From positions 62,001 through 126,000 of IMG/VR virus record IMGVR_UViG_3300032675_000001: DNA of 64,000 bases, one strand, 5' to 3'. Shown here in pieces: positions 16,962-28,104 of this stretch (position 1 is the first letter of the stretch; each line of letters starts with the position of its first letter). Position numbers and translations under genes: made by a program. The notes beneath the pieces are model-generated. The model saw nothing but the letters and a program-made list of their open reading frames with translations, had not been told where the DNA came from and did not search any database.

Positions 16962-17268
16962 AAGTGGCCCGTTCTGTTTCTAGGTGGAGCCGTACCCAGG
17001 AAATCATGCCGCTAGGGCAATATCCATAGTTGAGTTATCGTTTGCAGATAATTCTATTTAGTCTATAATGCGACTAACCAACCAGTCTACTCTCACCTTC
17101 AACTCGTAGTCGAATCCTAAATACGCCCCCATCAACTACTCTGAATCGCTGTGTTTCCGCCAGACAGCTTTTCACCCTTTATAGCGGCGGGTTATCAGAG
17201 TAGATGGTGGAGGCGAGGGGAGTCGCACCCCTGTCCTACGCAGCATTCAGTTTGTATCAACAACTGAT
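16962..17268 (-). ncRNA. ssrA: Circularly permuted (two-piece) tmRNA; outer ends approximate
   Basis: Acceptor piece ...GACAGGGGTGCGACTCCCCTCGCCTCCACCA ends at 17205. A 74-nt intervening segment (17131..17204) is closed by CTACTCTGA/TCAGAGTAG. The coding piece starts GGGGGCGTATTTAGGATTCGAC at 17130. Tag frame 17045..17004 = ANDNSTMDIALAA*. Confidence 0.95.
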
Positions 17269-17299
17269 AACTTACTTATACACTATTCACAGAAACATG

Positions 17300-17491
17300 T
17301 CAAGAAATAACTTGAACCATGTAGTTTTTAGATTTTTCCTCAAACTCTGCTCGTTTGCGATCCATATCAATCTTGCGAAGGAGCAAAGGATCGTTGGGCT
17401 TGATCACATATCTGTTTTTTTCAAGAACAGCCCGAAGACGTTTTTGATCATCCGTGAAAGTTTCACGGTCGCTGTTTATTTTTCTAGCCAT
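17300..17491 (-). CDS. Hypothetical basic protein
   Basis: Short ORF in operon orientation. Confidence 0.55.
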   Translation of the reverse strand: MARKINSDRETFTDDQKRLRAVLEKNRYVIKPNDPLLLRKIDMDRKRAEFEEKSKNYMVQVIS

Positions 17492-17533
17492 TAAAGTTGT
17501 CCTTTGAACCACAATATTTAACATTACCCATCG

Positions 17534-18658
17534 TTAGTCTCTATCAAGTCCCACATACTCATGAGAAAAGCAAACACGCTTGATGTGCTTATCTTTATGG
17601 TTCTTTTCCTTGACGGCGCGGTTGGTTATATAATCTTTTCTACCCTTACCGTTCTTTGACGTTCCTCTCCACCGTGGGGAAGAGTTTCTGTATTCACCCA
17701 AACGTGGATGTGCAGTTTTAGAAAAAAACCTACAACCTCTTGCTAAGAAGATTTCACCAATCGCATCACTTAAACGGGTTCCAAATCCAAGACCCTGATA
17801 CTCTGGTAGAATAACGGTTCTATGACCTCTCCATGCATTCTTGAAGTTGCCATTTGGAAATGGAAGAGCAGCAGAAAATCCTACTATTTCACCATCCCAA
17901 ATAGCTAACCAGCATTGTGCAGTTCTATTAAGGTTTCCGTCAAGATAGTGATGGTGGCGGAAGATTGGCCAAACTTCGGTTGAACAAGGTATGATTTCCA
18001 GTTTGATTTCAGGTCTTGGCCGAAGTGACCCCCTTCCGGTCATCTGACCGGTCATAGTGTCATATACCCAATCGGGCTGTAACCATTCAATCACATCATA
18101 ATGGCATGTTGCGAGAACAATGTTCTTTAGGTTATGTTTGTCAACATATCTACGAATGGCAACAGAACACGATTTAGCTACATTCCTGTCAATAACAGAT
18201 GTGAACTCATCAAATACCATACCTGACACCAATGACCTTGCGAGATTAGCGCGAAACTGTTCTCCATTTGAAAGAACATGATATGGCCTGAGCCAAGATG
18301 GAATGGTGTTTAATCCCACAGCAGACAGTCGTTCTGCAGCTTGATCTGCCGATTCAAAGTGTGAGCAGATTGCTTTAGTTTCATCCCATTCAGGTTGTTC
18401 AGTAGAACCAAACGATTTCAGCAGAGATGACTTACCTGATCCAGATGGACCAACAATCAACCCGATACCATAATCTTCCGGAATACTTGGAACATTTGGA
18501 ACAGTAAATGTGGTAGTCCCGTTGAACTCATAGTCAAACATAGATGATACTGCTTTAGTGATATCATCTTGAAATACAGATACCGATATATCTCTACTCG
18601 GTATCTTATCGTTCTCAAACTCAAATAGAGATGCTATACTATCGTGCATATTATTCAT
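17534..18658 (-). CDS. ABC-type ATPase fused to GNAT acetyltransferase
   Basis: GPSGSGKS, LSNGEQFR, DEFTS and TCHYD; C-terminal R.VILPEYQGLGFG acetyl-CoA motif. Confidence 0.88.
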   Translation of the reverse strand: MNNMHDSIASLFEFENDKIPSRDISVSVFQDDITKAVSSMFDYEFNGTTTFTVPNVPSIPEDYGIGLIVGPSGSGKSSLLKSFGSTEQPEWDETKAICSHFESADQAAERLSAVGLNTIPSWLRPYHVLSNGEQFRANLARSLVSGMVFDEFTSVIDRNVAKSCSVAIRRYVDKHNLKNIVLATCHYDVIEWLQPDWVYDTMTGQMTGRGSLRPRPEIKLEIIPCSTEVWPIFRHHHYLDGNLNRTAQCWLAIWDGEIVGFSAALPFPNGNFKNAWRGHRTVILPEYQGLGFGTRLSDAIGEIFLARGCRFFSKTAHPRLGEYRNSSPRWRGTSKNGKGRKDYITNRAVKEKNHKDKHIKRVCFSHEYVGLDRD

Positions 18659-19001
18659 CTGCTATTTCAAACAGGTCCCCATATGGGTTCTGTTCTTTTT
18701 CGTATTGCTCTTTTGCATTCTGAATACGTGCTTGTGAAATCTTGATATAATCTGGATCAAGATCAATGCCAATATAGTTGAAGCCTTCAAGCATCGCAGC
18801 CTTACCTGTTGAACCAGAACCATTGAATGGATCAAGAACAGTCCCACCCTTTGGTGTTACTAAACGACACAGATACTTCATCAAGTCAGTTGGTTTTACC
18901 GCCTACGTGGGGTGAGTATTTAAATACTCACCCCGAACCTCCTTTACATATATCTTCAACTCATTTGGTAGCGAGTCGAAGTCTTTCTTTGATAATTCCA
19001 T
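18651..19001 (-). CDS. C-terminal fragment of the N6/N4 DNA methyltransferase, with an in-frame TAG at 18903..18905
   Basis: MELSKKDFDSLPNELKIYVKEVRGEYLNTHPT*AVKPTDLMKYLCRLVTPKGGTVLDPFNGSGSTG... carries the SAM-binding DPFxGSG motif that 19712..22267 lacks. Confidence 0.8.
18909..18934. repeat. Perfect 26-bp palindrome
   Basis: GGGGTGAGTATTTAAATACTCACCCC. Confidence 0.95.
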
Positions 19002-19734
19002 TGTTATTTTTCATTTCCTCTATGACTTCATGCTCCCAGAATCTCAAAACAGTAAATCCACATTTCCTCAAATATGCATCTTGTGATTTGTCTAAGTTCA
19101 TTCTTTTTTGCTGCCTAAGGTCCGGAATTCCATTTTTCAATTTTGATGGATGTCCGTGCCAGTAATCACCATCCCATTGAATGATGATTTTTTTATCCGG
19201 TATTAGAACGTCAACTGATATTTTGTCTGCTATTAGTATTTGTTCTTCAAATATAATATCCTCGTTCAATAATATCTGCCTTCCGAGTAACTCTAATTTG
19301 TTTGGTCCTTTTTTTCTATTCTGTGCCATGTTTCCATTAGTAGATGCTCTCCTGATCCATTCTTCATCTGTATTTCTGCATTCTATGGTGCAGTAAGTTG
19401 GGTTATTATCTTTCAGTCGGCTTTTACTCCAATAGAAAGTATTATGACACATTTTACATTCAAATGCAACTTTATTTTTTGCCTGAAAATCATTAGCACA
19501 CTTATGACTGCAGAAATGATTAGCATGTGCCTCTAATGTCGCCAGACTCCTATACACTTGATTACCACACATAGCACATTCAACGATTCGTCCAGTTTTT
19601 CTTTGTGGTTTAGGGCTGGTCCTGCTACAATATGCACTGCAATATTGCCTATTTGCTGGCATATCTGCAGTATGAGGTTTTCCGCATCCCTTACATATTA
19701 TCGTTCTCGTTTTATATTTGTTTTTTCTGTACAT
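18961..19734 (-). mobile_element. Free-standing Vsr/DUF559-like endonuclease with N-terminal zinc-ribbon repeats, inserted in the methyltransferase gene
   Basis: Three CxxC...YCS/FCS/YCT..C units; VD..I...IIIQWDGDYWH and D....D..L...G.TVLRFWE motifs. Confidence 0.85.
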
Positions 19735-22267
19735 TTAATACTCCATTACTTTCGTTTGAAGTATTTATATGTTTTTTGATTTTTTCAATAATATCTGGTG
19801 GCGTATTTTCATCAATCAGATAACGCGAAACTTTATCCAATCCGCTGTTACGATCTGATCTGCTGGCTTTAGCAGCATAATACATTCTCTGAACATTCTC
19901 ATAATCCAGTGTGTCTTCCTCTGTGAATTCACAAGACTTAAAAAATCTTGCTGCTGATCCTGTGTCGCCTCGTTTCGCTGATGGAACTCTTTGATATTCA
20001 CCATAACAGTTGGTATTATCATCTCCTGTATGTGATGGTTCTGTTCCCTTTACATCGCCTTGTTGACCCTTACTTTCAGGAAACAATGCGACAACTTCAT
20101 CACTGCCATCATGAATGATATTAGCGGGGAATCTTCCTTTTAGTTCTGGTCGGTCAAACTCAGTTCTAGGTCTATGATCAGATTTTCTATAGTAACAGTT
20201 TGTGCAAATATCTTGATCTTCTTCTACTGGATTTAGTGTATCAGGAGCATAATCATCGCATCCCATATATTCCGAAGAGCCAGCAAGTGATCCTGACTTC
20301 GCCGTGCATTTTCCTTGCGGCGTTGCACTTAGCTTATCCTCTTCCGACATATAATCAACCCGACAATCATCAATATTGATTCCACCAGTTCCATGCTTTA
20401 GAACATTCTTCGCTACAGTCTTTTCAGATAGTGGCTTCCTAGCAACGCAAATAGGCTCCCACGCTGGCTTCAGTGCCGTGCCCCAGCCATCCCATTGTTT
20501 TGCTTCTTCTGTTGCTGGTGCAGTAACGTCCCAAGTTTCATAAACAGTTGTTCCACCAACAGTTGGCAATGCGGATTTTCCACTAGTGCTTCTAGCTTTA
20601 ATCTGCTGACCAATTACCCTTCGTTCAATATTATTATAAATGCCGGTCAATCTTTCAGAAGTTTCTTCATCCGGATTGAGCACTTCCTTCATGCGTTTCC
20701 ATTTTTCCTGTGGTGGCAACAAATTAACCCATGGGTCAAACTTTTTTCCATCTGCTGGTAGTGTTAGATAGTTACTTGCTCTGAACCCACACTCAGTGTC
20801 AATCTGCTTTCGCGTTTTCCCACTTTTTTTAAATATATTAGTCAGGATATTCTTTAGTTCAATTACTTCTTCATCATCGGCAGGATTTTCCATATGCTTA
20901 TCAATAGCCTTACCGATGTTCATAGACTTAGGAAAGCCAGAGTTTCCAGTAGTGAATGCTTTACCATCCCTTACTGCGACGAATGCGCCAGTAGGAACCT
21001 TAACACACCAAATCTTACCTTCATATTCAATCGGAGTTACAGTTGCCAGAGTGGTTTTATGTCCTTTCCAGCCTCGTATAACTTGTGATCCGAGTTGTTG
21101 GCAAATAACATCAGATTCTCCGCCCGATTGTCCAATGGATCGTGGTTTATATGATGCACTACTTCCGTGCGAGTAAGCATTCTGTTTAAATGCTTCGCTA
21201 CTATTAGACGGTGCTCCATGACATACCCGTCTCTCCTCGCCATAGGCAGGAAGTCCACTGGACAACGAACATACTTCGCTCCTTTGTAGTTTCCATGTGA
21301 GCGACGGTATGTTACTCCACCCTTCCAAGCAGGGTTGGTTTCTCCAGTCATGCGGTCCACCAAATCTTGTTCCGACTTCTCGGACCAGTTGGCTCTCCCC
21401 TTGTGTGCGTGAGCTTTCCATTCTATTCCCCGCAAAACTCCGTTGCATGTTTTTGAACACACAGGAGTTTTCACTCGTTGTAAATGTTTTATATTTCTGT
21501 AGAACGTTATCCCACATACTTGACAAGTATGTTGTTGTTTTCCAATATGTTCGTTTATAGGTGGCGATCCAGTATTGGAACGACCTATTGACTTGTTGGA
21601 ACATTGTTTGCTGCAAGTTTTGTTTCTTATAGCCTGTTCTTTGGTATGAGTCTGATAAGGATTGTTGCAAACCAGACAGGTTTTCCAAAAAGGGTATATT
21701 CTCTTGCGAACTAAGTTCTTCTGCAAAAGCGAATATTTCTCTTCCGCCTCGTTCAACAATGCAACGATGGTTTCGGCTGACGATTTGGTCTGTATGATCA
21801 GATTGTATTCTGTAAGCGGTATCCTTGATGTCATATTCATAAACTTCCTCAACTGGCATATAACTATATGTTTGAGTATATTTATCATAACACAAGACTA
21901 AATCGTTTGGTTTTATTGCTGTGTATGGTTTTATGCCGTTTGGCGTCACAATCTCTGTGTCATCAGATAGACAGCCATAGACCCACCCAATCTGATCGCG
22001 AATATCAAATCCAGCGTCTTCAATCGCTACCACCATTCTATGATATGTGCGAGTACCAGAGAATGCCAACAGGTGTCCGCCTGGCTTCAATACACGCATC
22101 ACCTCTGACCACATCTCAACACTATATGCGATGCCAGAACTGTCCCACGACTTACCCATGAAACCAAGTTCATATGGCGGATCAGTTACCACAGAATCAA
22201 CAGAGTTTTCTTCCATGGTTTTTAATACGTCAACACAGTTGCCGTTATGTAATACAAAGCTACTCAT
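19712..22267 (-). CDS. N6-adenine/N4-cytosine DNA methyltransferase (beta-type motif order), N-terminal fragment, intein-containing
   Basis: DPPY, W.YG|SGFPKS after intein removal, LKPAWEPI..ARKP, GRFPAN, SAARFF and AKASRSDRN motifs. Confidence 0.92.
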   Translation of the reverse strand: MSSFVLHNGNCVDVLKTMEENSVDSVVTDPPYELGFMGKSWDSSGIAYSVEMWSEVMRVLKPGGHLLAFSGTRTYHRMVVAIEDAGFDIRDQIGWVYGCLSDDTEIVTPNGIKPYTAIKPNDLVLCYDKYTQTYSYMPVEEVYEYDIKDTAYRIQSDHTDQIVSRNHRCIVERGGREIFAFAEELSSQENIPFLENLSGLQQSLSDSYQRTGYKKQNLQQTMFQQVNRSFQYWIATYKRTYWKTTTYLSSMWDNVLQKYKTFTTSENSCVFKNMQRSFAGNRMESSRTQGESQLVREVGTRFGGPHDWRNQPCLEGWSNIPSLTWKLQRSEVCSLSSGLPAYGEERRVCHGAPSNSSEAFKQNAYSHGSSASYKPRSIGQSGGESDVICQQLGSQVIRGWKGHKTTLATVTPIEYEGKIWCVKVPTGAFVAVRDGKAFTTGNSGFPKSMNIGKAIDKHMENPADDEEVIELKNILTNIFKKSGKTRKQIDTECGFRASNYLTLPADGKKFDPWVNLLPPQEKWKRMKEVLNPDEETSERLTGIYNNIERRVIGQQIKARSTSGKSALPTVGGTTVYETWDVTAPATEEAKQWDGWGTALKPAWEPICVARKPLSEKTVAKNVLKHGTGGINIDDCRVDYMSEEDKLSATPQGKCTAKSGSLAGSSEYMGCDDYAPDTLNPVEEDQDICTNCYYRKSDHRPRTEFDRPELKGRFPANIIHDGSDEVVALFPESKGQQGDVKGTEPSHTGDDNTNCYGEYQRVPSAKRGDTGSAARFFKSCEFTEEDTLDYENVQRMYYAAKASRSDRNSGLDKVSRYLIDENTPPDIIEKIKKHINTSNESNGVLNVQKKQI
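19732..19769 (-). promoter_or_regulatory. TATAAATA late promoter plus RBS-sequestering hairpin for the Vsr-like endonuclease
   Basis: TATAAATA at 19762..19769. AATACTTCA pairs with TGGAGTATT, which contains the GGAG RBS. Confidence 0.7.
20942..21973 (-). mobile_element. Intein (344 aa) in the DNA methyltransferase
   Basis: Begins CLSDDTEIVT; block B SRNHR; block F/G YEGKIWCVKVPTGAFVAVRDGKAFTTGN followed by Ser. Removal restores YG-SGFPKS. Confidence 0.93.
21037..21840 (-). CDS. HNH homing endonuclease encoded in the +1 frame inside the intein
   Basis: CxxC zinc repeats, NPAWKGG, and GYVMEHRLIVAKHL...EVVHHINHDPLDNRAENL. GAGGA RBS 5 nt before ATG 21840; ATAAATA at 21879..21885. Confidence 0.9.
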   Translation of the reverse strand: MNMTSRIPLTEYNLIIQTKSSAETIVALLNEAEEKYSLLQKNLVRKRIYPFWKTCLVCNNPYQTHTKEQAIRNKTCSKQCSNKSIGRSNTGSPPINEHIGKQQHTCQVCGITFYRNIKHLQRVKTPVCSKTCNGVLRGIEWKAHAHKGRANWSEKSEQDLVDRMTGETNPAWKGGVTYRRSHGNYKGAKYVRCPVDFLPMARRDGYVMEHRLIVAKHLNRMLTRTEVVHHINHDPLDNRAENLMLFANNSDHKLYEAGKDIKPLWQL

Positions 22268-22321
22268 GAAATCATCATTCCTTATAGATGGATGTAATAT
22301 AGCGCAATATGGAGTTAATGT

Positions 22322-22795
22322 CTATTGTTTTGGGCAAACCGATGAGGTTGACATAAGATACCAGCCATCTTTGAACTCACTGCTTATGCTAAAGCCCAAC
22401 TTTGTATAAAAGTCAGGAATATCAGTGGATAAAACCACCTCTTGCCCTTTTGCCTTGCTAAAATATATAGCTTCTCTGGTTATTCGTTTTGCTATTCCTT
22501 GGCCTCTATGGGATTCGGCAACTGCAACCCACGATAGGGCAAAGAAATGTTGAATAGCTAACATGTTCAGTGCAGCGAAACCAACAAGCTCCTCGCCATC
22601 TTCTACGAGGATATAATACTTGGTTGCATTCTGCAGCGAAACCAAAAAGTCAATCTGTTCTAACTTGATCTTTTTCTGTTTCGGGTCTTGTATTAAAATA
22701 GCATCATCTACATGAAAGAATGGATAACATTGATACAGTAATCCAGTTACCTTTTCAATGTTATCCAGTTCTTCAACTATTCTTAGTCGGATCAT
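22322..22795 (-). CDS. GNAT acetyltransferase
   Basis: VAV.ESHRGQGIA and FYTKLGF motifs. Confidence 0.88.
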   Translation of the reverse strand: MIRLRIVEELDNIEKVTGLLYQCYPFFHVDDAILIQDPKQKKIKLEQIDFLVSLQNATKYYILVEDGEELVGFAALNMLAIQHFFALSWVAVAESHRGQGIAKRITREAIYFSKAKGQEVVLSTDIPDFYTKLGFSISSEFKDGWYLMSTSSVCPKQ

Positions 22796-23106
22796 TCGCC
22801 GTAGCAAATGGTCTGACGAGTTACAAAGTTATTATACTGATCGTAAGTATCACGGACTTCACATGTGCCACGGAAATGATCGTAGTAGCGATATGCAATA
22901 ATCGTATGATACACTGGATAAGTAGGTGCAACTACTACCGTGTGTGGCTGAGTTGATTCAACGATGACACCACCGATGATTCCCCCAATAACCAAAGGAG
23001 CAACCCATCTTCCTCCACCACCATGCCAGTGACCGGGGCGAGCGTCCGCCATTGCTGGTGCAGTTAGAAGTGCCAATCCCGCTAATGCTGATACAAGTTT
23101 CTTCAT
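22792..23106 (-). CDS. Exported Gly-rich protein
   Basis: Signal peptide ending AMA/ADA, HGGGG and hydrophobic IGGIIGG. Upstream TTGACA-17nt-TATATT promoter. Confidence 0.7.
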   Translation of the reverse strand: MKKLVSALAGLALLTAPAMADARPGHWHGGGGRWVAPLVIGGIIGGVIVESTQPHTVVVAPTYPVYHTIIAYRYYDHFRGTCEVRDTYDQYNNFVTRQTICYGE

Positions 23107-23166
23107 AGTTTTTCTCCTTACTTGCTAATATATTTACTTTTTGATCAAATGTCAAGAGTTAATGTG

Positions 23167-26100
23167 TTAAAGTTGCTCAAAACGCTCACGAAGCCATGCC
23201 CATTCGTAACTTAGCTTCAGCTTATCAAACTCACCGTTTACATCGTCATAGTATTCATCAGCGTCTAATGCACCCTTGATACTATATTCCGAGAACTCCC
23301 CTTGACCCTTGTTTAACCATGCTTCCAGCCTTTCTCGCGAAATGTCAGTATCATCAGCCTTTAGCTTCAACACTTCACGAAATGCCGTTCTCCACGTGGA
23401 GAATGGATCGGTATTGTACTGTGCAATACCTGATAGCAGTGGCACTACTTCATGTTCATCATCCAACGTAAAGTCAAGCCCATTTCCTACATTAGCTAAT
23501 GTAAGTTTCTTATTGTAACAAATGAGGCCCTGGTGGCCGTATATCAAACCATTTACTGGATTTTTGGCATGGAAAATATAATGCTTCGGAACCTGCATTC
23601 TATCTGGTTGCCAGTTGAAGTCAAACTTTAAACTGACTTTCAGCTTAGCAAATACAGTAAAGCACCATGGAGTGTCACTTGCCTCAACGGCGGCATGATA
23701 CGCGGCTACACGACCATTTACACCATCAACTCTAACAACACGATTCTTCAAGTTTTTGGTTGCTTGAAGTAGATGTTCCCAGTTTTCTTCTGCACCAGTT
23801 TCACCATTGCTCAAATATACAATGTCCAGTGGCCTTGACATCGCAAGTTTAGGTGCACGTTTGATGTAAGGATAGTCATACAGTTCCTTCTTAACGTGAT
23901 CCTTTACTTCCTTGGGAACAGTGATTCGGGTTGCGCCCGTGCTGGTGATAATGATATTCTTGTTCTCTGGTGCCCACAAGCACATAGGCTCAACATCTTG
24001 AACATTGACGCTAGCATTATCTTCCGTAATGATGGTAGCATATGGAAAACCATCAACCTTTTTAATGGCATTAACATGCGTATCATCGCTTGTAACGATG
24101 ATTGGCTCCGGAAGTCTATTGGTCTTGATGGTCCCATTGTAGTTTACCTTATGGTAATCTTCCAACACTTGCATATCGTCAATGATTTCACGAGTCTTGT
24201 TTACGTCAATAAAAAATGTATCGCCAAACTTAAGCTTACCGCTCGGGAAGACATGAAGATGATCACGAGCAAATGGATCAACCGTATATGAGAAATCAAA
24301 GTTGGAATAATCACATACGCTACTGCATATCCAAAGATAATGCTCTTTCTTCTGATGCTGCCTAGAGATAATATTTCTCAACGTGTTAAGATAGCTTTCG
24401 TCATACGGAATAGTGGTTACATGTTTTCCGCTTGCTTTGCTTTTTAATAGTTCAACTACCTTTTCCGTTTCTTTATTACCATGATCAATAACCACAATGT
24501 CATGGACACACTGTGTTGCAGTTGCACGAATGTTCTTGACAAAGTTGAGGTTACTTAGATGCTCAATGATCTTAATCCACTTGGTATCTTCGCCAAATGT
24601 CTCACGGTTAACCAAGAATGTGCTACCCCAATGTGACCACTGAGTTCCGAACACATGGACCATTTTCATCTGCCATGGGTTAGGATAATATTCAAAGTCA
24701 AAATTGGTGTAATCCAGTTCTGAGTTTAGTACCCAAAACAGATCGGTAGTAGATCGGTTGGAACACCGATTTATAGTATCAACCCAAGAGTTAAGATAAC
24801 GTGTCTTTTGTATGTTAGGGTACTTTGCCTTTAACTCGTCAAATCTTGCAAGAGACTCTGGGTTGCCCTTATCAACATAGAACATATCAGACTTTTTGAA
24901 TAACTTAAACAATGTTTTGTCATCAAGCTTTTCATCAACTACCCAATTGATTTCTCTGTGGCCCTTTAACCACATATTGGCATTGATCAAGTATGTCTGT
25001 GTCAACTCACTGTCAGATGATCCAAATGCATGAACATACTCTGCTTGTTCAATGGTCGGTCTCCATGAGAAATCAAAATCAGTGTAATCAAGATCAGAAT
25101 TTAGTGCCCAAAAAATCTCACCATGGTGTTCTTCAACAAGATCACTCAGAGTGGTCTTAACGTAATACCGAGGGTAATCAGAAACCACATTCTCATCAAT
25201 ACTAAGCCATTCCATTTTAACGATTTCACCGTTTGTATTTGGCGAAACATATCGTGGACCATCTTCTGGATTTTCAATGGTTCCAAACTGATAGATATAT
25301 GGAGGAGACAACTCATCAGGATGCCATGAAAAGTCAAACGTGTCAACATTTATTCCATCAGGAATGACCCAGTTTTCTTTTGATGGAAGACGCATTGCCG
25401 TTGGATTCCCAACATAAAAGTTATCTGTTGCGCCCGGAACAATATACATTGGACCACCGGTTTTCTGATGCTGAGTACCGAAGATGTAGATATATGGATC
25501 ATTGGTATCATCAGGATGCCATGAATAATCAAAATCTCCGATTACTGTTGGATCGGTAATGGTCCATTTAGACTTGTCTGGTTTACGAATGGCTTTAATG
25601 ATACGAGTATCAATATACTTTAACGGAGAACTTTCTGTTGCACCCGGAGCAATATATCTTGGACCGCCTGTCTTTTGCCACTGAGTTCCGAACTGATAGA
25701 TATATGGCTGATCGTCCAAATATGGATGCCAAGAGAAATCAAATGCATCAACATCAATCTCATCGGGATTGTATTCCCAGTTGTCTCTATTAGGAAGCAC
25801 TTTGGCAGTTTGACATTCTTCATACTTGACTGCGACACCACCCGGAACAGTATATGTAGGACCACCAGTCAATGCCCACTGTGTAGGGAACTGATAGATA
25901 TAGGGTGGTGCAGTATCATCAGGATGCCAAGAAAAGTCAAAACCTTCCATGTCCACATTATCCGGAATGGTCCAGTTTTTCATGCTTGGATGACGAATGG
26001 CTTTCACATCATCAACATATTTTACTTCAGTGGCATTAGGCATTACATAACGTGGACCGCCTGTCTTCTGCCACTGAGTTCCAAACTGATAGATATATTT

Positions 26101-28104
26101 TGGCTCACCGGGATTTGGCTTCCAAGAGAAATCAAACTTGCTAGCATCAATGTTGTCTGGAACTTCCCAGTACTGCATATCATTATCAAGAGTTGCAATA
26201 ACATCTGTAACATACTTGACCTGAGTTGCACCTTCCACTCTATATTCAATAGTCGGCATTACTTCTGCTGGATGCCACTGATTACCAAACACATAGATAT
26301 ATGGTTCATCAGTTTCATCAGGATGCCATGACCAATCAAAGTCTTTTATTTTCAGATTTCTCAGAATAGTAAAATTTTGTTCATTTGGCAAACGAGTTGC
26401 CTTGATGATAGATGTATCAATATACTTGACGGGGCTGTTCTTATCGCAACCGGGCGTCATATATGTGGGGCCACCGGTTTTTTGATGCTGAGTCCCAAAT
26501 TTATAGATATATGGTTGATCTTCCGCATATGGGTGCCACGAGAAATCAAACGTTGATTCGTCAATAAGTTCATGATCATAAACCCAGTTTGTTTTGTCAG
26601 GCATTGCTATAGCAACCTGACCCTCTACGTACTGAACTTTTATGGCACCGGGAACGGTGTAGACAGGACCTCCACTAAATGCCCATTGAGTACCAAACAC
26701 GTAAATATAATCAGGGCTAGTAGCATCTGGATGCCAAGAGAAATCAAAACCGTTAACGTCCACGCTTTGAGGGGATGTCCAATGCTCCATGCTAGGCAGT
26801 CTTTTAACTTTTTGTACATCAACATATTTTCTTTCTGTTGCACCCGGAACAATATACATTGGTCCACCGGTTTTCTGCCATTGCGTCCCGAACTCATAGA
26901 TGTAGGGAGGATCGTGTGGATTTGGTTCCCATGAGTAGTCAAAACCCCTATCATCAACGTTATCAGGGATAATCCAGTTTGTCAAGCTTGGATTACGTGT
27001 GGCACGTTCATCCATATATTTGTATTCAGTGGCACCTTCTACCACATATTGAATTGATACCTTGTCTTCTGGCTTGTTCCATTGATTGCCCCAAGCATAT
27101 ATATACGGCGGGGATGTTGGATCAGGAACCCAGCTATAATCAATACCATATGAGTCTTCCAAGTGTTGAAAATTATTGGGCTGAGGCAGCAACTTTGCTG
27201 AACTTGGTATATGCTTTTCATCTATTGCACCTTCCATAAGATACCGAATTGTAGGCATCTTTGTGCTATCATACTGATTGTTACCAAATACATAATTTAG
27301 AGTTGGTTCACGTGGATCAGGTCTCCATGAGAAATCAAAACTGTTTATGTCAATAGGATATAATATTTCCCACTTATTCCATTCAGGTAGAACCGGAATC
27401 TTTTCTGGCATATATTTTTTATCAGTTGCTCCGGGGGCATGATACTCTAACGTGGACTTGAGGGTGCCCTCAATATACTTGTTTCCCCATATATAAATGA
27501 AGGGAGGGTCCATAGGATCAGGACGCCAAGACATATCAAATCTTGACTTATCAACTTCCTGAACTTCTACCCAACAATCATTGGGTAATAGTTCAACAAT
27601 GTTGTTCATATACTTCACGTTCACAGCACCGGGAACATGATACTCTAAAACAGACTTAATCTGTACGGGGAAGTATTTGCATCCCCACTTATAGATATAA
27701 GGAGGGTCAGATGGATCAGGGTGCCACGAGAAATCAAACTTGGTATGATCTACGGTGTCAAGTTCAACCCAGCAATCGTTGCTAAGGTTTCTGCGTTTTA
27801 CCGGATCAACATCGGAGCGATATATGATGACATCGCTATGTTCTTTGGGGCAAAGCCAAGTTCCAGAATCCTTTTGATGTTGGCTTGGCCACACATTATT
27901 ATGTTCTTCCGCCCACACATCTTCATCGGGAAGGAACTCAAAGTCAAAGTCCCAGTCAAACCCACGATAGTCACAGAACTCATTAATGATCCAGAAATGT
28001 TCAGTCGTTGACTGGCTTCTGGCATCCTCTAATGATTCTGCAAACTTTTCTCTTGGGTGAACGTTTGGTTTTTTACCGTAATAAAAAACATCTCTAATTG
28101 CCAT
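23167..28104 (-). CDS. 1645-aa protein: 13 tandem FDFSWHPD repeats plus several glycosyltransferase-A-like modules
   Basis: Repeat consensus FDFSWHPDxxxPPYIYxFGTQWQKTGGPxYxVPGAxxxKY. The last module aligns by eye with 51179..52126. Confidence 0.85.
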   Translation of the reverse strand: MAIRDVFYYGKKPNVHPREKFAESLEDARSQSTTEHFWIINEFCDYRGFDWDFDFEFLPDEDVWAEEHNNVWPSQHQKDSGTWLCPKEHSDVIIYRSDVDPVKRRNLSNDCWVELDTVDHTKFDFSWHPDPSDPPYIYKWGCKYFPVQIKSVLEYHVPGAVNVKYMNNIVELLPNDCWVEVQEVDKSRFDMSWRPDPMDPPFIYIWGNKYIEGTLKSTLEYHAPGATDKKYMPEKIPVLPEWNKWEILYPIDINSFDFSWRPDPREPTLNYVFGNNQYDSTKMPTIRYLMEGAIDEKHIPSSAKLLPQPNNFQHLEDSYGIDYSWVPDPTSPPYIYAWGNQWNKPEDKVSIQYVVEGATEYKYMDERATRNPSLTNWIIPDNVDDRGFDYSWEPNPHDPPYIYEFGTQWQKTGGPMYIVPGATERKYVDVQKVKRLPSMEHWTSPQSVDVNGFDFSWHPDATSPDYIYVFGTQWAFSGGPVYTVPGAIKVQYVEGQVAIAMPDKTNWVYDHELIDESTFDFSWHPYAEDQPYIYKFGTQHQKTGGPTYMTPGCDKNSPVKYIDTSIIKATRLPNEQNFTILRNLKIKDFDWSWHPDETDEPYIYVFGNQWHPAEVMPTIEYRVEGATQVKYVTDVIATLDNDMQYWEVPDNIDASKFDFSWKPNPGEPKYIYQFGTQWQKTGGPRYVMPNATEVKYVDDVKAIRHPSMKNWTIPDNVDMEGFDFSWHPDDTAPPYIYQFPTQWALTGGPTYTVPGGVAVKYEECQTAKVLPNRDNWEYNPDEIDVDAFDFSWHPYLDDQPYIYQFGTQWQKTGGPRYIAPGATESSPLKYIDTRIIKAIRKPDKSKWTITDPTVIGDFDYSWHPDDTNDPYIYIFGTQHQKTGGPMYIVPGATDNFYVGNPTAMRLPSKENWVIPDGINVDTFDFSWHPDELSPPYIYQFGTIENPEDGPRYVSPNTNGEIVKMEWLSIDENVVSDYPRYYVKTTLSDLVEEHHGEIFWALNSDLDYTDFDFSWRPTIEQAEYVHAFGSSDSELTQTYLINANMWLKGHREINWVVDEKLDDKTLFKLFKKSDMFYVDKGNPESLARFDELKAKYPNIQKTRYLNSWVDTINRCSNRSTTDLFWVLNSELDYTNFDFEYYPNPWQMKMVHVFGTQWSHWGSTFLVNRETFGEDTKWIKIIEHLSNLNFVKNIRATATQCVHDIVVIDHGNKETEKVVELLKSKASGKHVTTIPYDESYLNTLRNIISRQHQKKEHYLWICSSVCDYSNFDFSYTVDPFARDHLHVFPSGKLKFGDTFFIDVNKTREIIDDMQVLEDYHKVNYNGTIKTNRLPEPIIVTSDDTHVNAIKKVDGFPYATIITEDNASVNVQDVEPMCLWAPENKNIIITSTGATRITVPKEVKDHVKKELYDYPYIKRAPKLAMSRPLDIVYLSNGETGAEENWEHLLQATKNLKNRVVRVDGVNGRVAAYHAAVEASDTPWCFTVFAKLKVSLKFDFNWQPDRMQVPKHYIFHAKNPVNGLIYGHQGLICYNKKLTLANVGNGLDFTLDDEHEVVPLLSGIAQYNTDPFSTWRTAFREVLKLKADDTDISRERLEAWLNKGQGEFSEYSIKGALDADEYYDDVNGEFDKLKLSYEWAWLRERFEQL
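25230..27790 (-). repeat. 13 degenerate ~60-codon coding repeats; boundaries approximate
   Basis: Recurring (+)-strand words such as ggatgcca.gagaaatcaaa and ccaccggtttt; the protein repeat was counted by eye. Confidence 0.85.

What the first reader, a model, noticed from the sequence alone, without database searches (positions are those of the whole stretch)
18651..19850. Methyltransferase split in two by a Vsr-like nuclease, with an in-phase 8-bp direct repeat and no intron core
Seen: the catalytic DPPY half (19712..22267) and the SAM-binding DPFxGSG half (18651..19001) are separated by an endonuclease ORF that overlaps both, leaving no room for a group I core. TAAATACT occurs at 19760..19767 and 18915..18922 in the same codon phase; removing the 845 bp between them gives ...KKHINT-HPT. 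Both copies sit in hairpins sharing GAGTATT, so long-range alternative pairing is possible. Knowledge: mobE splits nrdA of phage Aeh1 into two polypeptides that reassemble. Inference: a two-chain MTase, or DNA/RNA-level excision at the repeat. An 8-bp AT-rich repeat could be chance.
Basis: partly seen in the sequence, partly recalled or inferred. Interest (0 to 1): 0.65.

Follow-up and report, generated by a model that had tools for sequence, protein, structure and literature searches.

The report
Endonuclease-split methylase gene with hop gap
A phage DNA methyltransferase gene has been cut in two by a mobile nuclease cassette, and that cassette also leaves a stop codon plus three bases inside the enzyme's most conserved motif; this tiny gap recurs in 21 unrelated samples in a form that suggests ribosomes hop over it.

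Summary
The split is real, and independent assemblies give identical sequence. The "SAM-binding half" is not an open frame, because an in-frame TAG (18905..18903) plus GCG sits between the Thr and Val codons of the invariant HPTVKP motif.

Relatives of the Vsr-like/DUF559 endonuclease occupy the same methyltransferase site in at least 21 other viral or metagenomic loci. They share one anatomy:
- a conserved C-terminal extension on the upstream ORF;
- the endonuclease;
- a conserved N-terminal extension with its own start;
- a copy of N-x-HPT whose codons form the 3' arm of a covarying hairpin;
- a gap of 5 to 9 nt that always opens with a stop codon (all three kinds) and ends in ACN or GCN in 17 of 21 loci.

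Ten gaps change the reading frame.

This matches the architecture of the T4 gene 39 / mobA / gene 60 cassette, but in a new host gene, with a different nuclease family and a far shorter gap.

Best reading: the enzyme is made as two chains, and its small chain needs a +6 hop of peptidyl-tRNA-Thr from ACG to GCG. No splicing or DNA excision at the 8-bp repeat is supported. That repeat is at chance level (P about 0.05) and is absent from relatives. The hop itself is inferred, not shown.

The parts
19712..22267 (-). Upstream methyltransferase ORF (851 aa, P0001). It holds the DPPY motif, an intein, the target-recognition region and the cassette-encoded C-terminal extension. About 494 aa remain after protein splicing.
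20903..21973 (-). Intein-like insert (aa 99-455) between G98 and S456: it starts with Cys, ends in Asn and is followed by Ser. It is absent from homologue L008, which is 81% identical over aa 1-98.
   Evidence: weak Hint_2 match, E 0.018
21037..21888 (-). HNH endonuclease ORF (PF13392) lying out of frame inside the intein-coding stretch. Its likely start is ATG 21840, behind GAGGA.
19715..19840 (-). C-terminal extension (CTE, aa 810-851) of the upstream ORF. Its conserved core is Y.L.D(D/N).P..I..EI...L. It is absent from uninterrupted homologues and conserved in other cassette loci.
19731..19772 (-). 5' hairpin that pairs the GGAG and the AUG of the endonuclease gene.
   Evidence: the same kind of element is described in PMC2677866
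18961..19734 (-). Vsr-like (DUF559 / EDxHD-type) homing endonuclease ORF (257 aa, P0003), with three N-terminal CxxC...CxxxC zinc modules.
18906..19001 (-). N-terminal extension plus N-T-H-P-T (32 codons from ATG 19001). It overlaps the endonuclease 3' end out of frame. Its conserved peptide is .LS...F..LP.EL...
18938..18944 (-). Shine-Dalgarno-like AAGGAGG, 3 nt 5' of the hairpin. It is conserved in most relatives, in differing codon contexts.
18909..18934 (-). 3' hairpin: an 11-bp stem (18934..18924 paired with 18919..18909) and a UUAA loop. The 3' arm is the N-T-H-P codons.
18900..18908 (-). ACG (Thr, proposed take-off, 18908..18906), TAG (18905..18903) and GCG (proposed landing, 18902..18900). 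The last six bases are the insert that interrupts HPT|VKP.
18651..18899 (-). Downstream methyltransferase part from GTA (Val): VKPTDLM...DPFNGSGS and on, 82 codons plus the stop at 18651..18653. It overlaps the start of the next ORF (ATG 18658).

Best explanation
The locus is a beta-class (PF01555) DNA methyltransferase gene fractured by a mobile homing-endonuclease cassette.

The cassette runs from about 19840 to 18900. In order, it supplies:
- a C-terminal extension and stop for the upstream fragment;
- a Vsr-like endonuclease gene, whose ribosome-binding site and AUG are locked in a hairpin that contains TATAAATA;
- an N-terminal extension with its own start for the downstream fragment;
- a replacement copy of N-T-H-P-T;
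- a 6-nt coding gap (TAG GCG) exactly between the Thr and Val codons of HPTVKP.

Shown here: the anatomy, its conservation at the same site in 21 other loci, and the covarying hairpin.

Inferred:
1. The enzyme is made as two polypeptides that reassemble without a covalent link. They are about 494 aa (after intein splicing) and 114 aa.
2. To make the small one, the ribosome reaches ACG with UAG in the A site. Peptidyl-tRNA-Thr unpairs and re-pairs 6 nt on at GCG (C-G, G-C and a U.G wobble). Decoding resumes at GUA, which restores HPT-VKP. Refolding of the hairpin just 5' of the take-off codon may help.
3. The gap's benefit to the element is that it destroys the endonuclease's own target, as proposed for mobA and gene 60.
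For: Uninterrupted homologues: about 70 read N.HPTVKP...DPF.GSG in one ORF of 400-600 aa, with no extension sequences.

Same site: endonuclease relatives (36-62% identical) sit at the same methyltransferase site, with conserved CTE and NTE peptides that differ at synonymous positions.

The gap in 21 distinct gapped loci:
- a stop codon directly follows the Thr codon in every one (TGA 8, TAG 7, TAA 6);
- gap length is 5-9 nt, and 10 of 21 change the frame;
- the triplet before the resume codon is ACN in 10 and GCN in 7; the background rate is 0.10 and the binomial tail is 4e-14;
- in GCN loci the third base equals that of the take-off codon in 6 of 7.

Turnover: on the endonuclease tree, close relatives differ in gap length and stop type yet keep these features.

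Hairpin: it folds in all 21 loci (-13 to -23 kcal/mol), with 3-5 pair types at six stem positions.

Gapless relative: L083 has no gap and reads NTE-HPTVKP as one ORF, so this is the intended product.

Selection on the upstream part: the intein frame stays open across a 283-codon out-of-frame HNH ORF; 0 of 20,000 codon shuffles do so.

Sequence quality: identical in independent assemblies.

Literature:
- the same architecture (CTE, nuclease, NTE overlapping the nuclease out of frame, a homologous replacement segment, a bypass opening with a stop, matched take-off and landing codons) is described for the MobA element (bioRxiv 10.1101/2022.08.31.505936);
- synthetic 'stop-hops' over a stop flanked by matched codons work in E. 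coli (PMC5009743).
Against: - There are no RNA, protein or activity data. All public runs that hold the locus are DNA.
- Landing on GCG needs a first-position U.G pair.
- 4 of 21 loci have ATG, GTG, ATA or GTC instead of ACN/GCN.
- Among ACN loci, the third base matches the take-off codon in only 3 of 10.
- An ACN triplet could partly be the host's original Thr codon, kept by descent.
- Known efficient bypassing uses a 50-nt gap with a stem-loop at the take-off site, not 5' of it. Hops over stops in synthetic constructs are recalled as inefficient (from memory).
- In this window the start of the downstream frame has only a weak, distant SD (AGGA, 14 nt).
- The complex prediction gave no verdict.
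Confidence: 0.55

Rival explanations
1. Amber suppression. The phage's own tRNA with anticodon CUA reads the TAG, giving HPT-X-A-VKP, a small chain with two extra residues in the motif.
For: The genome encodes a tRNA(CUA) at G000 216380..216454. In this window the gap is 6 nt, in frame, and its stop is TAG.
Against: - Relatives use TAA and TGA as often as TAG, and 10 of 21 gaps are not multiples of 3, so suppression cannot be the family's mechanism.
- It would put two residues inside a motif that is uninterrupted in about 70 homologues.
- The genome shows no TAG recoding. Making TAG a sense codon gains less than the TGA or TAA controls, and TAG-joined ORF pairs are fewer (9 against 18-19).
Confidence: 0.12
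2. Termination and restart. Translation ends at the stop after HPT, and a new chain starts just behind the hairpin, which brings the AAGGAGG close. The enzyme then has three pieces: the large chain, a 32-aa peptide and a chain starting at or near VKP.
For: - L086/L087 read ACG TGA ATG GTC and L123 reads ACG TGA GTG GTA, that is, a stop followed by a start codon.
- The SD-like AAGGAGG lies just 5' of the stem in most loci.
Against: - This window and 15 or more other loci have no ATG, GTG or TTG between the stop and VKP.
- GCN, ACC, ACT and ACA are not near-cognate start codons.
- It does not explain why the triplet is ACN or GCN.
- It would split an invariant six-residue motif between two peptides.
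Confidence: 0.12
3. A dead gene. Selfish elements have invaded the methyltransferase and it is decaying; the stop inside the motif simply inactivates it.
For: There is a stop codon inside the most conserved motif. The gene carries three selfish inserts: the intein, the HNH gene and the Vsr-like gene.
Against: - The same interrupted arrangement persists in 21 diverged loci, with intact downstream ORFs and conserved motifs.
- CTE and NTE are conserved as peptides.
- The intein frame is kept open over 283 codons of an overlapping gene.
- The locus is identical in samples from two studies.
Confidence: 0.1
4. Removal of the insert as nucleic acid: either a self-splicing intron that carries the endonuclease ORF, or DNA deletion between the 8-bp (or 11/12-bp GAGTATT(T)AAAT) direct repeats, rejoining one reading frame.
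For: - Deleting 845 nt (the 8-mer) or 815 nt (19732..18918, the longer repeat) keeps the frame.
- Both repeat copies lie in hairpins.
- Vsr-like endonucleases do occur in group I introns (PMC2677866).
Against: - Either deletion still leaves HPT-TAG-GCG-VKP.
- No Rfam intron match at E <= 1 and none in nine related loci.
- Only about 25 and 55 nt lie outside the ORF.
- The flanks encode conserved peptides with their own stop and start.
- The 8-mer is at chance level and relatives have no equivalent.
- No joints in contigs of four DNA runs, although rare forms would be missed.
Confidence: 0.03

Closest known systems
MobA / gene 60 element of T4-like phages (Bonocora et al. 2011, cited in PMC5009743; Manning & Atkins 2022, bioRxiv 10.1101/2022.08.31.505936)
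   Same: - A homing endonuclease gene sits between the two halves of a split gene.
- The insert encodes a C-terminal extension of ORF1 and an N-terminal extension of ORF2, and the latter overlaps the nuclease ORF out of frame.
- The insert supplies a replacement copy of the host sequence next to the break.
- A non-coding gap opens with an in-frame stop after the take-off codon and ends at a triplet like that codon.
- A stem-loop 5' of the take-off site and an SD-like element are present.
- Gapless and split-only variants exist.
   Different: - The host gene is a DNA methyltransferase, not topoisomerase II.
- The nuclease is Vsr-like, not the HNH MobA.
- The gap is 5-9 nt, not 50 (20 in one clade).
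- There is no stem-loop within the gap.
- Take-off is at Thr ACN, not Gly GGA.
- Landing is often GCN.
- Bypassing here is inferred, not measured.
'Fractured genes' with Vsr-like endonucleases (Dassa et al. 2009, PMC2677866)
   Same: - Phage genes are broken into two ORFs on the same strand by a free-standing Vsr-like endonuclease gene.
- A hairpin, often with TATAAATA, lies upstream of the nuclease start.
- The nuclease 3' end overlaps the downstream ORF.
- One intein-less case (SbcD-like) has a 25-aa extension on one fragment and a 9-aa extension on the other.
   Different: - 26 of 27 loci in that paper rely on split inteins to rejoin the product; here the 42-aa and roughly 28-aa extensions are not intein halves.
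- Methyltransferases were not among the hosts.
- No stop-containing gap in the downstream ORF was described.
mobE splitting nrdA of Aeromonas phage Aeh1
   Same: A free-standing endonuclease gene splits an enzyme gene into two polypeptides that work together. The nuclease is controlled by a hairpin that sequesters its ribosome-binding site and holds a late-promoter element.
   Different: The nuclease is HNH and the host gene is different. As far as the texts read here say, there are no conserved extensions and no coding gap.
Synthetic 'stop-hops' in E. coli (Weiss et al. 1987, as summarised in PMC5009743)
   Same: Peptidyl-tRNA leaves a codon that is followed by a stop, re-pairs at a matching codon a few bases on, and decoding resumes after it, so 9 nt specify one residue.
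   Different: Those were engineered constructs. The 2016 review says no natural occurrences were known. Here the arrangement is natural, is conserved across a family, and comes with a 5' hairpin.
I-Bth0305I / EDxHD homing endonuclease family (PMC3239194)
   Same: A Vsr-like catalytic core at the C-terminus and a separate N-terminal DNA-binding region; found in phage genes.
   Different: I-Bth0305I is encoded in a group I intron. Sequence similarity here is weak (profile E 0.025 to 3r3p). The N-terminal region here is three FCS/MYM-like zinc modules.

Membership tests
Beta-class N6/N4 DNA methyltransferase (PF01555) | DPPY catalytic motif N-terminal, and HPTxKP plus FxGxG (AdoMet binding) C-terminal, collinear with single-chain homologues | tested here: met
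   PF01555 positions 1-126 are in the upstream ORF and 165-220 in the downstream part. The locus is collinear with L008 and about 70 single-ORF homologues. The motif is interrupted by 6 nt.
MobA/gene 60-type endonuclease-plus-bypass cassette | Endonuclease gene between the two halves of a split gene, with insert-encoded CTE and NTE and the NTE overlapping the nuclease out of frame | tested here: met
   The extensions are absent from uninterrupted homologues. The overlap is 41 nt (18961..19001).
MobA/gene 60-type endonuclease-plus-bypass cassette | Coding gap that starts with an in-frame stop (or hungry codon) after the take-off codon and ends at a matching landing codon | tested here: inconclusive
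   The stop is present in 21 of 21 loci. The landing triplet is ACN in 10, GCN in 7 and other in 4. In this window it is ACG to GCG.
MobA/gene 60-type endonuclease-plus-bypass cassette | Gap of about 50 nt with a take-off stem-loop inside it; host gene topoisomerase II large subunit; nuclease MobA (HNH) | tested here: not met
   The gap is 6 nt (5-9 in relatives), the stem-loop lies 5' of the take-off codon, the host is a methyltransferase and the nuclease is DUF559/Vsr-like.
MobA/gene 60-type endonuclease-plus-bypass cassette | One polypeptide made across the gap | not testable with these tools
   No RNA or protein data exist; only DNA runs hold the locus.
Fractured gene rejoined by a split intein (Dassa 2009) | An N-intein half of about 100 aa starting with Cys/Ser after the upstream fragment, and a C-intein half ending in (H)N followed by Cys/Ser/Thr before the downstream fragment | tested here: not met
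   The CTE is 42 aa and the NTE about 28 aa. Neither has a Pfam match at E <= 5. The Asn before T-H-P-T belongs to the host motif N.HPTVKP, which uninterrupted homologues also have.
Vsr-like / EDxHD homing endonucleases | Vsr-type catalytic core with conserved acidic and His residues | tested here: met
   PF04480, 7.7e-8. The profile matches 3hrl at 1.7e-6, Vsr 1vsr/1cw0 at 0.016 and I-Bth0305I 3r3p at 0.025. E148, D175, D188, D190, H193 and D215 are invariant across 8 relatives.
Vsr-like / EDxHD homing endonucleases | Cleaves the uninterrupted allele near the insertion site and spreads by homing | not testable with these tools
   The only support is indirect: the same insertion site in diverged methyltransferases.
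Group I intron with an endonuclease ORF | Conserved P3-P9 catalytic core flanking or overlapping the ORF, with exons that join into one frame | tested here: not met
   No Rfam match at E <= 1 in 17000..23500 and none in nine related loci. The flanks are translated extensions. Every in-frame deletion leaves the TAG.
Stop-codon-recoded phage (TAG read as sense) | Genome-wide in-frame TAG in conserved genes, together with a suppressor tRNA | tested here: not met
   A tRNA(CUA) is present. But ORFs under the standard code cover 90% of the genome, and TAG read as sense gives no excess gain or joined ORF pairs.

The most novel reading that the evidence does not exclude
The 5-9-nt stop-containing gaps are natural programmed 'stop-hops'. 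A covarying hairpin just 5' of a Thr codon, with a stop in the A site, makes ribosomes carry peptidyl-tRNA-Thr a few bases forward to an ACN or GCN triplet and resume, restoring HPT-VKP. This would be a second, independent family of bypass elements carried by homing-endonuclease cassettes, and the first natural short hop. Its conserved tail and head peptides might also hold the two enzyme fragments together.
Probability: 0.45. Interest if true: 0.85.

Novelty: new variant of a known kind. Interest (0 to 1): 0.72.

Why it matters
Programmed translational bypassing is known in bacteria and phages essentially from one element, T4 gene 60 and its homologues in topoisomerase genes. A 2016 review notes that short hops over stops work in synthetic constructs but that no natural case was known (PMC5009743).

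This locus and its 21 relatives offer a compact, naturally varied test set:
- gaps of 5-9 nt;
- all three stop codons;
- a range of take-off and landing codon pairs;
- a covarying 5' hairpin.

That set lets one ask directly what the minimal signals for a hop are.

It would also show that homing-endonuclease cassettes have arrived more than once at the same way of being tolerated: split the host gene, add extensions, and hide their own target behind an untranslated gap.

There is a practical point too. Gene callers will annotate these methyltransferases as fragments or pseudogenes.

If the hop is not real, the locus is still a clear new example of an intein-less fractured gene.

Tried and rejected
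- Complex prediction. The input was three chains: aa 1-98, aa 456-851, and the 83-aa downstream part as partner. The verdict was 'no answer': the score was 0.84, but the control with chain 2 replaced scored 0.80. It is not evidence for or against binding. The head and tail peptides were not tested.
- Group I intron. Rfam at E <= 1 found none in the window or in nine related loci. I hand-built a P1 pairing with a U.G at 19759 and removal of 19758..18902. It gives HINT-S-VKP, which loses the invariant His-Pro, so I dropped it.
- TAG recoding. I tested genome-wide ORF gain and TAG-joined ORF pairs. There was no signal, so I used no other genetic code.
- Megablast against phage records found no match.
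- A strict DNA pattern for the SD-hairpin module in viral contigs found only the loci already known plus one chance hit, L094.
- Internal GTG/ATG in the hairpin's 5' arm as the true start. It is simply the complement of the His codon (CAC or CAT), and in this window it is out of frame (GTG AGT ATT TAA), so it is not independent evidence.
- ATG in the hairpin loop in the downstream frame. It occurs in only 3 of the 6 loci with 7-nt gaps, so it is not general (worked out by hand).
- TATAAATA / TAAATACT as a phage promoter. TAAATACT lies 10-60 nt upstream of ORF starts in 15 of 34 genomic copies, but many copies sit only 10-11 nt from the ATG. The result is ambiguous.
- A conserved 5' hairpin in relatives was not consistently predicted.
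- The identity of the suppressor tRNA could not be assigned; it is at most 73% identical to any other tRNA of the phage.
- RNA evidence. No RNA run holds the locus.

Full report
**Setting.** The window is bases 62001-126000 of a 360,683-bp virus record with direct terminal repeats. The same phage appears in many lake-water metagenomes and in an independent freshwater study. Everything described here lies on the minus strand.

**Check of the observation.**
- 19712..22267 (851 aa) carries DPPY and matches PF01555 positions 1-126.
- 18961..19734 (257 aa) matches DUF559.
- The stretch with DPFNGSGS matches PF01555 positions 165-220.

The nuclease ORF overlaps the upstream ORF by 23 nt and the downstream frame by 41 nt. 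TAAATACT occurs at both stated places, 845 nt apart, and is read as (I/L)-N-T in each frame. Both copies lie in hairpins that fold better than every one of 200 shuffles.

Two things do not hold.
- First, 18651..19001 is not an open frame. The frame from ATG 19001 runs for 32 codons, ends ...N-T-H-P-T, and stops at TAG 18905..18903. GCG follows, and then GTA AAA CCA (V-K-P).
- Second, an in-phase shared 8-mer between two such neighbourhoods has a chance of about 0.05, both from shuffles and genome-wide. Relatives have no equivalent repeat.

Contigs from a second study cover both junctions and the TAGGCG without a single difference, and no deletion joint is seen.

**What uninterrupted homologues say.** About 70 related genes from viral contigs read N-x-H-P-T-V-K-P...DPF.GSG in one ORF of 400-600 aa. 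Against them, this locus has two interruptions:
- a large insert between the DRNSG region and N-T-H-P-T;
- six extra bases, TAGGCG, exactly between the Thr and Val codons of the most conserved motif.

**The insert is a recurrent cassette.** Relatives of the nuclease, 36-62% identical, sit at the same site of methyltransferase genes in other viral and metagenomic contigs. They share one anatomy.
- The upstream ORF ends in a conserved tail, Y.L.D(D/N).P..I..EI...L, followed by a stop.
- The nuclease gene comes next.
- A frame that overlaps the nuclease's 3' end encodes a conserved head.(I/L)S..Q(F/Y)..LP..L..(H/Y)F. It has its own SD and start 26-32 codons before the His codon.
- Both peptides differ at synonymous positions between AT-rich and GC-rich loci. 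Both are absent from uninterrupted homologues. They are therefore translated parts of the cassette.
- Then come N-x-H-P-T and a gap.

**The gap.** In 21 distinct loci:
- A stop codon directly follows the Thr codon in every one (TGA 8, TAG 7, TAA 6).
- The gap is 5, 6, 7, 8 or 9 nt long, so 10 of 21 change the reading frame.
- The triplet just before the resume codon is ACN in 10 loci and GCN in 7. The background rate is 0.10 and the binomial tail is 4e-14, ignoring relatedness.
- The other four loci have ATG, GTG, ATA and GTC.
- In GCN loci the third base equals that of the take-off codon in 6 of 7. In ACN loci it does so in 3 of 10.

On a tree of the nucleases, close relatives differ in gap length and stop type, and ACN and GCN are intermixed. 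The gap therefore turns over quickly while keeping 'stop first, Thr-like triplet last'. Two relatives, L083 and L176, have no gap, and L083 reads head-HPTVKP... as one ORF.

**The hairpin.** In all 21 loci the N-x-H-P codons form the 3' arm of a hairpin of -13 to -23 kcal/mol. The pairs at the third base of Pro and His, at all three bases of the x codon, and at the third base of Asn show 3-5 different standard pair types. The stem base includes the first base of the Thr codon in 19 of 21 loci. In this window the 5' arm is read in a different frame from that of its nearest relatives, yet the stem is perfect. Selection therefore acts on the structure. The GTG or ATG in the 5' arm is simply the complement of the His codon. 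An SD-like AAGGAGG lies just 5' of the stem in most loci, in differing codon contexts. Its role is open.

**How it most likely works.**
- Shown: the anatomy and its conservation.
- Inferred, point 1: the enzyme is made as two chains. The large chain needs protein splicing. An intein-like insert (C99...N455, followed by S456) interrupts GWVYG|SGFPKS and is absent from L008, which is 81% identical over aa 1-98.
- Inferred, point 2: the small chain needs the ribosome to cross ACG UAG GCG. The only mechanism that yields the conserved motif in all the loci is a hop. It must cope with all three stops and with gaps that are not multiples of three. Peptidyl-tRNA-Thr leaves ACN when a stop occupies the A site and re-pairs at the next ACN or GCN. 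Decoding then resumes at the Val codon.
- For GCN the first-position pair is U.G, which may be why the wobble base then matches.
- Refolding of the 5' hairpin behind the ribosome could drive the short forward movement. Pairing of exiting mRNA has been proposed as a driver of forward bypassing in gene 60, but I read only the title and abstract of that preprint (bioRxiv 10.1101/2024.12.09.627546).
- The gap probably protects the element from its own nuclease by breaking the target, as proposed for mobA.

**Comparison with what is known.**
- Dassa et al. 2009 described 'fractured genes' broken by Vsr-like nucleases. Nearly all are rejoined by split inteins. One intein-less case has short extensions on both fragments. 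The same paper describes hairpins that contain TATAAATA and sequester the nuclease's ribosome-binding site. The 5' hairpin here is such an element: it pairs GGAG and AUG and holds TATAAATA at 19769..19762.
- Manning and Atkins 2022 dissected the MobA element. Its parts are a CTE, the nuclease, an NTE overlapping it out of frame, a replacement homologous segment, and a bypass cassette that ends at the landing codon. It is found only in topoisomerase genes. The present cassette has every one of these parts, in a different host gene, with a different nuclease family and a gap of 5-9 nt rather than 50.
- The 2016 recoding review says that stop-hops between matched codons were shown with synthetic constructs and that no natural occurrences were known.
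- Four full-text searches found no description of this methyltransferase cassette. A study of inserts in actinophage methylases reports other elements at other sites.

**Rivals.**
- Amber suppression by the phage's tRNA(CUA) is possible in this window only. It would insert two residues in the motif. It cannot explain the relatives, and the genome shows no TAG recoding.
- Restart after termination fits the two loci that have ATG or GTG, but not this one.
- A dead gene is hard to square with the conservation, or with the intein frame being kept open across a 283-codon overlapping HNH gene.
- Splicing or DNA excision is not supported.

**Limits.** There are no RNA, protein or activity data. The counts ignore relatedness, although the tree shows repeated changes. 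The complex prediction gave no verdict. The operators' limits were kept: the reads stretch was under 6,000 letters, no other genetic code was named, and the costly protein searches were not used.

Noticed in passing
window 20903..21973 (-) and 21037..21888 (-): The methyltransferase carries an intein-like insert (Cys99...Asn455, followed by Ser456). A 283-codon HNH endonuclease ORF lies inside it in another frame. The intein frame has 0 stops over that stretch, against 26 in the third frame, and 0 of 20,000 codon shuffles keep an alternative frame open. This looks like a free-standing homing endonuclease gene overprinted on an intein linker, rather than fused in frame or splitting the intein.
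   Followed up: partly
window 17004..17268 (-); aragorn places it at G000 78913..79297: A permuted (two-piece) tmRNA gene (Rfam RF04321, 85.5 bits, E 5.8e-16) with predicted tag peptide ANDNSTMDIALAA, a short way downstream of the methyltransferase operon.
   Followed up: no
G000:C1:216380-216454 (+), outside the window: The phage encodes a tRNA with anticodon CUA (amber suppressor type), set apart from its cluster of 42 other tRNAs at 230-256 kb. No tRNA-Tyr was found. The genome shows no general TAG recoding, and the tRNA's amino-acid identity could not be assigned.
   Followed up: partly
window 17534..18658 (-): The ORF directly downstream, whose ATG overlaps the methyltransferase stop, fuses a P-loop/ABC-like ATPase region to a GNAT acetyltransferase domain (phrog_11143, E 6e-118). 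It is probably co-translated with the small methyltransferase chain.
   Followed up: no
window 23167..28104 (-): A 1645-aa protein built of a dozen or more repeats of a module of about 60-70 aa with the signature FDFSWHPD...PYIY.FGTQW.
   Followed up: no
L008:4850-4900 compared with window 18905..18935: The uninterrupted homologue L008 reads DRNSG-GVLN-NHPTLKP. Its DNA there (GGTGGAGTATTAAACAATCATCC) resembles this window's hairpin and N-T-H-P region, and also the GGAGTATTAAAT at the nuclease start. It may be a scar of a lost cassette ('hit and run').
   Followed up: partly
window 21436..21687 (-) and 19450..19700 (-): The HNH and the Vsr-like endonucleases share the same kind of N-terminal CxxC...(Y/F)CSxxC zinc modules. 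These resemble FCS/MYM-type fingers: 2w0t, 2l8e and 2das, and a cross-match at E 0.0022. Two nuclease families appear to use one DNA-binding module.
   Followed up: partly
L088:1259-5415: In one related contig, three successive ORFs (a methyltransferase, the Vsr-like nuclease and another methyltransferase) all end in nearly the same peptide, QLSSD(D/Q)F(E/G)DL(I/L)I.
   Followed up: no
window 18950..19000 (-): A second predicted stem of 10 bp (CUUCGACUCG paired with UGAGUUGAAG) spans the nuclease stop codon within the head-coding region. Its conservation in relatives was not tested.
   Followed up: no
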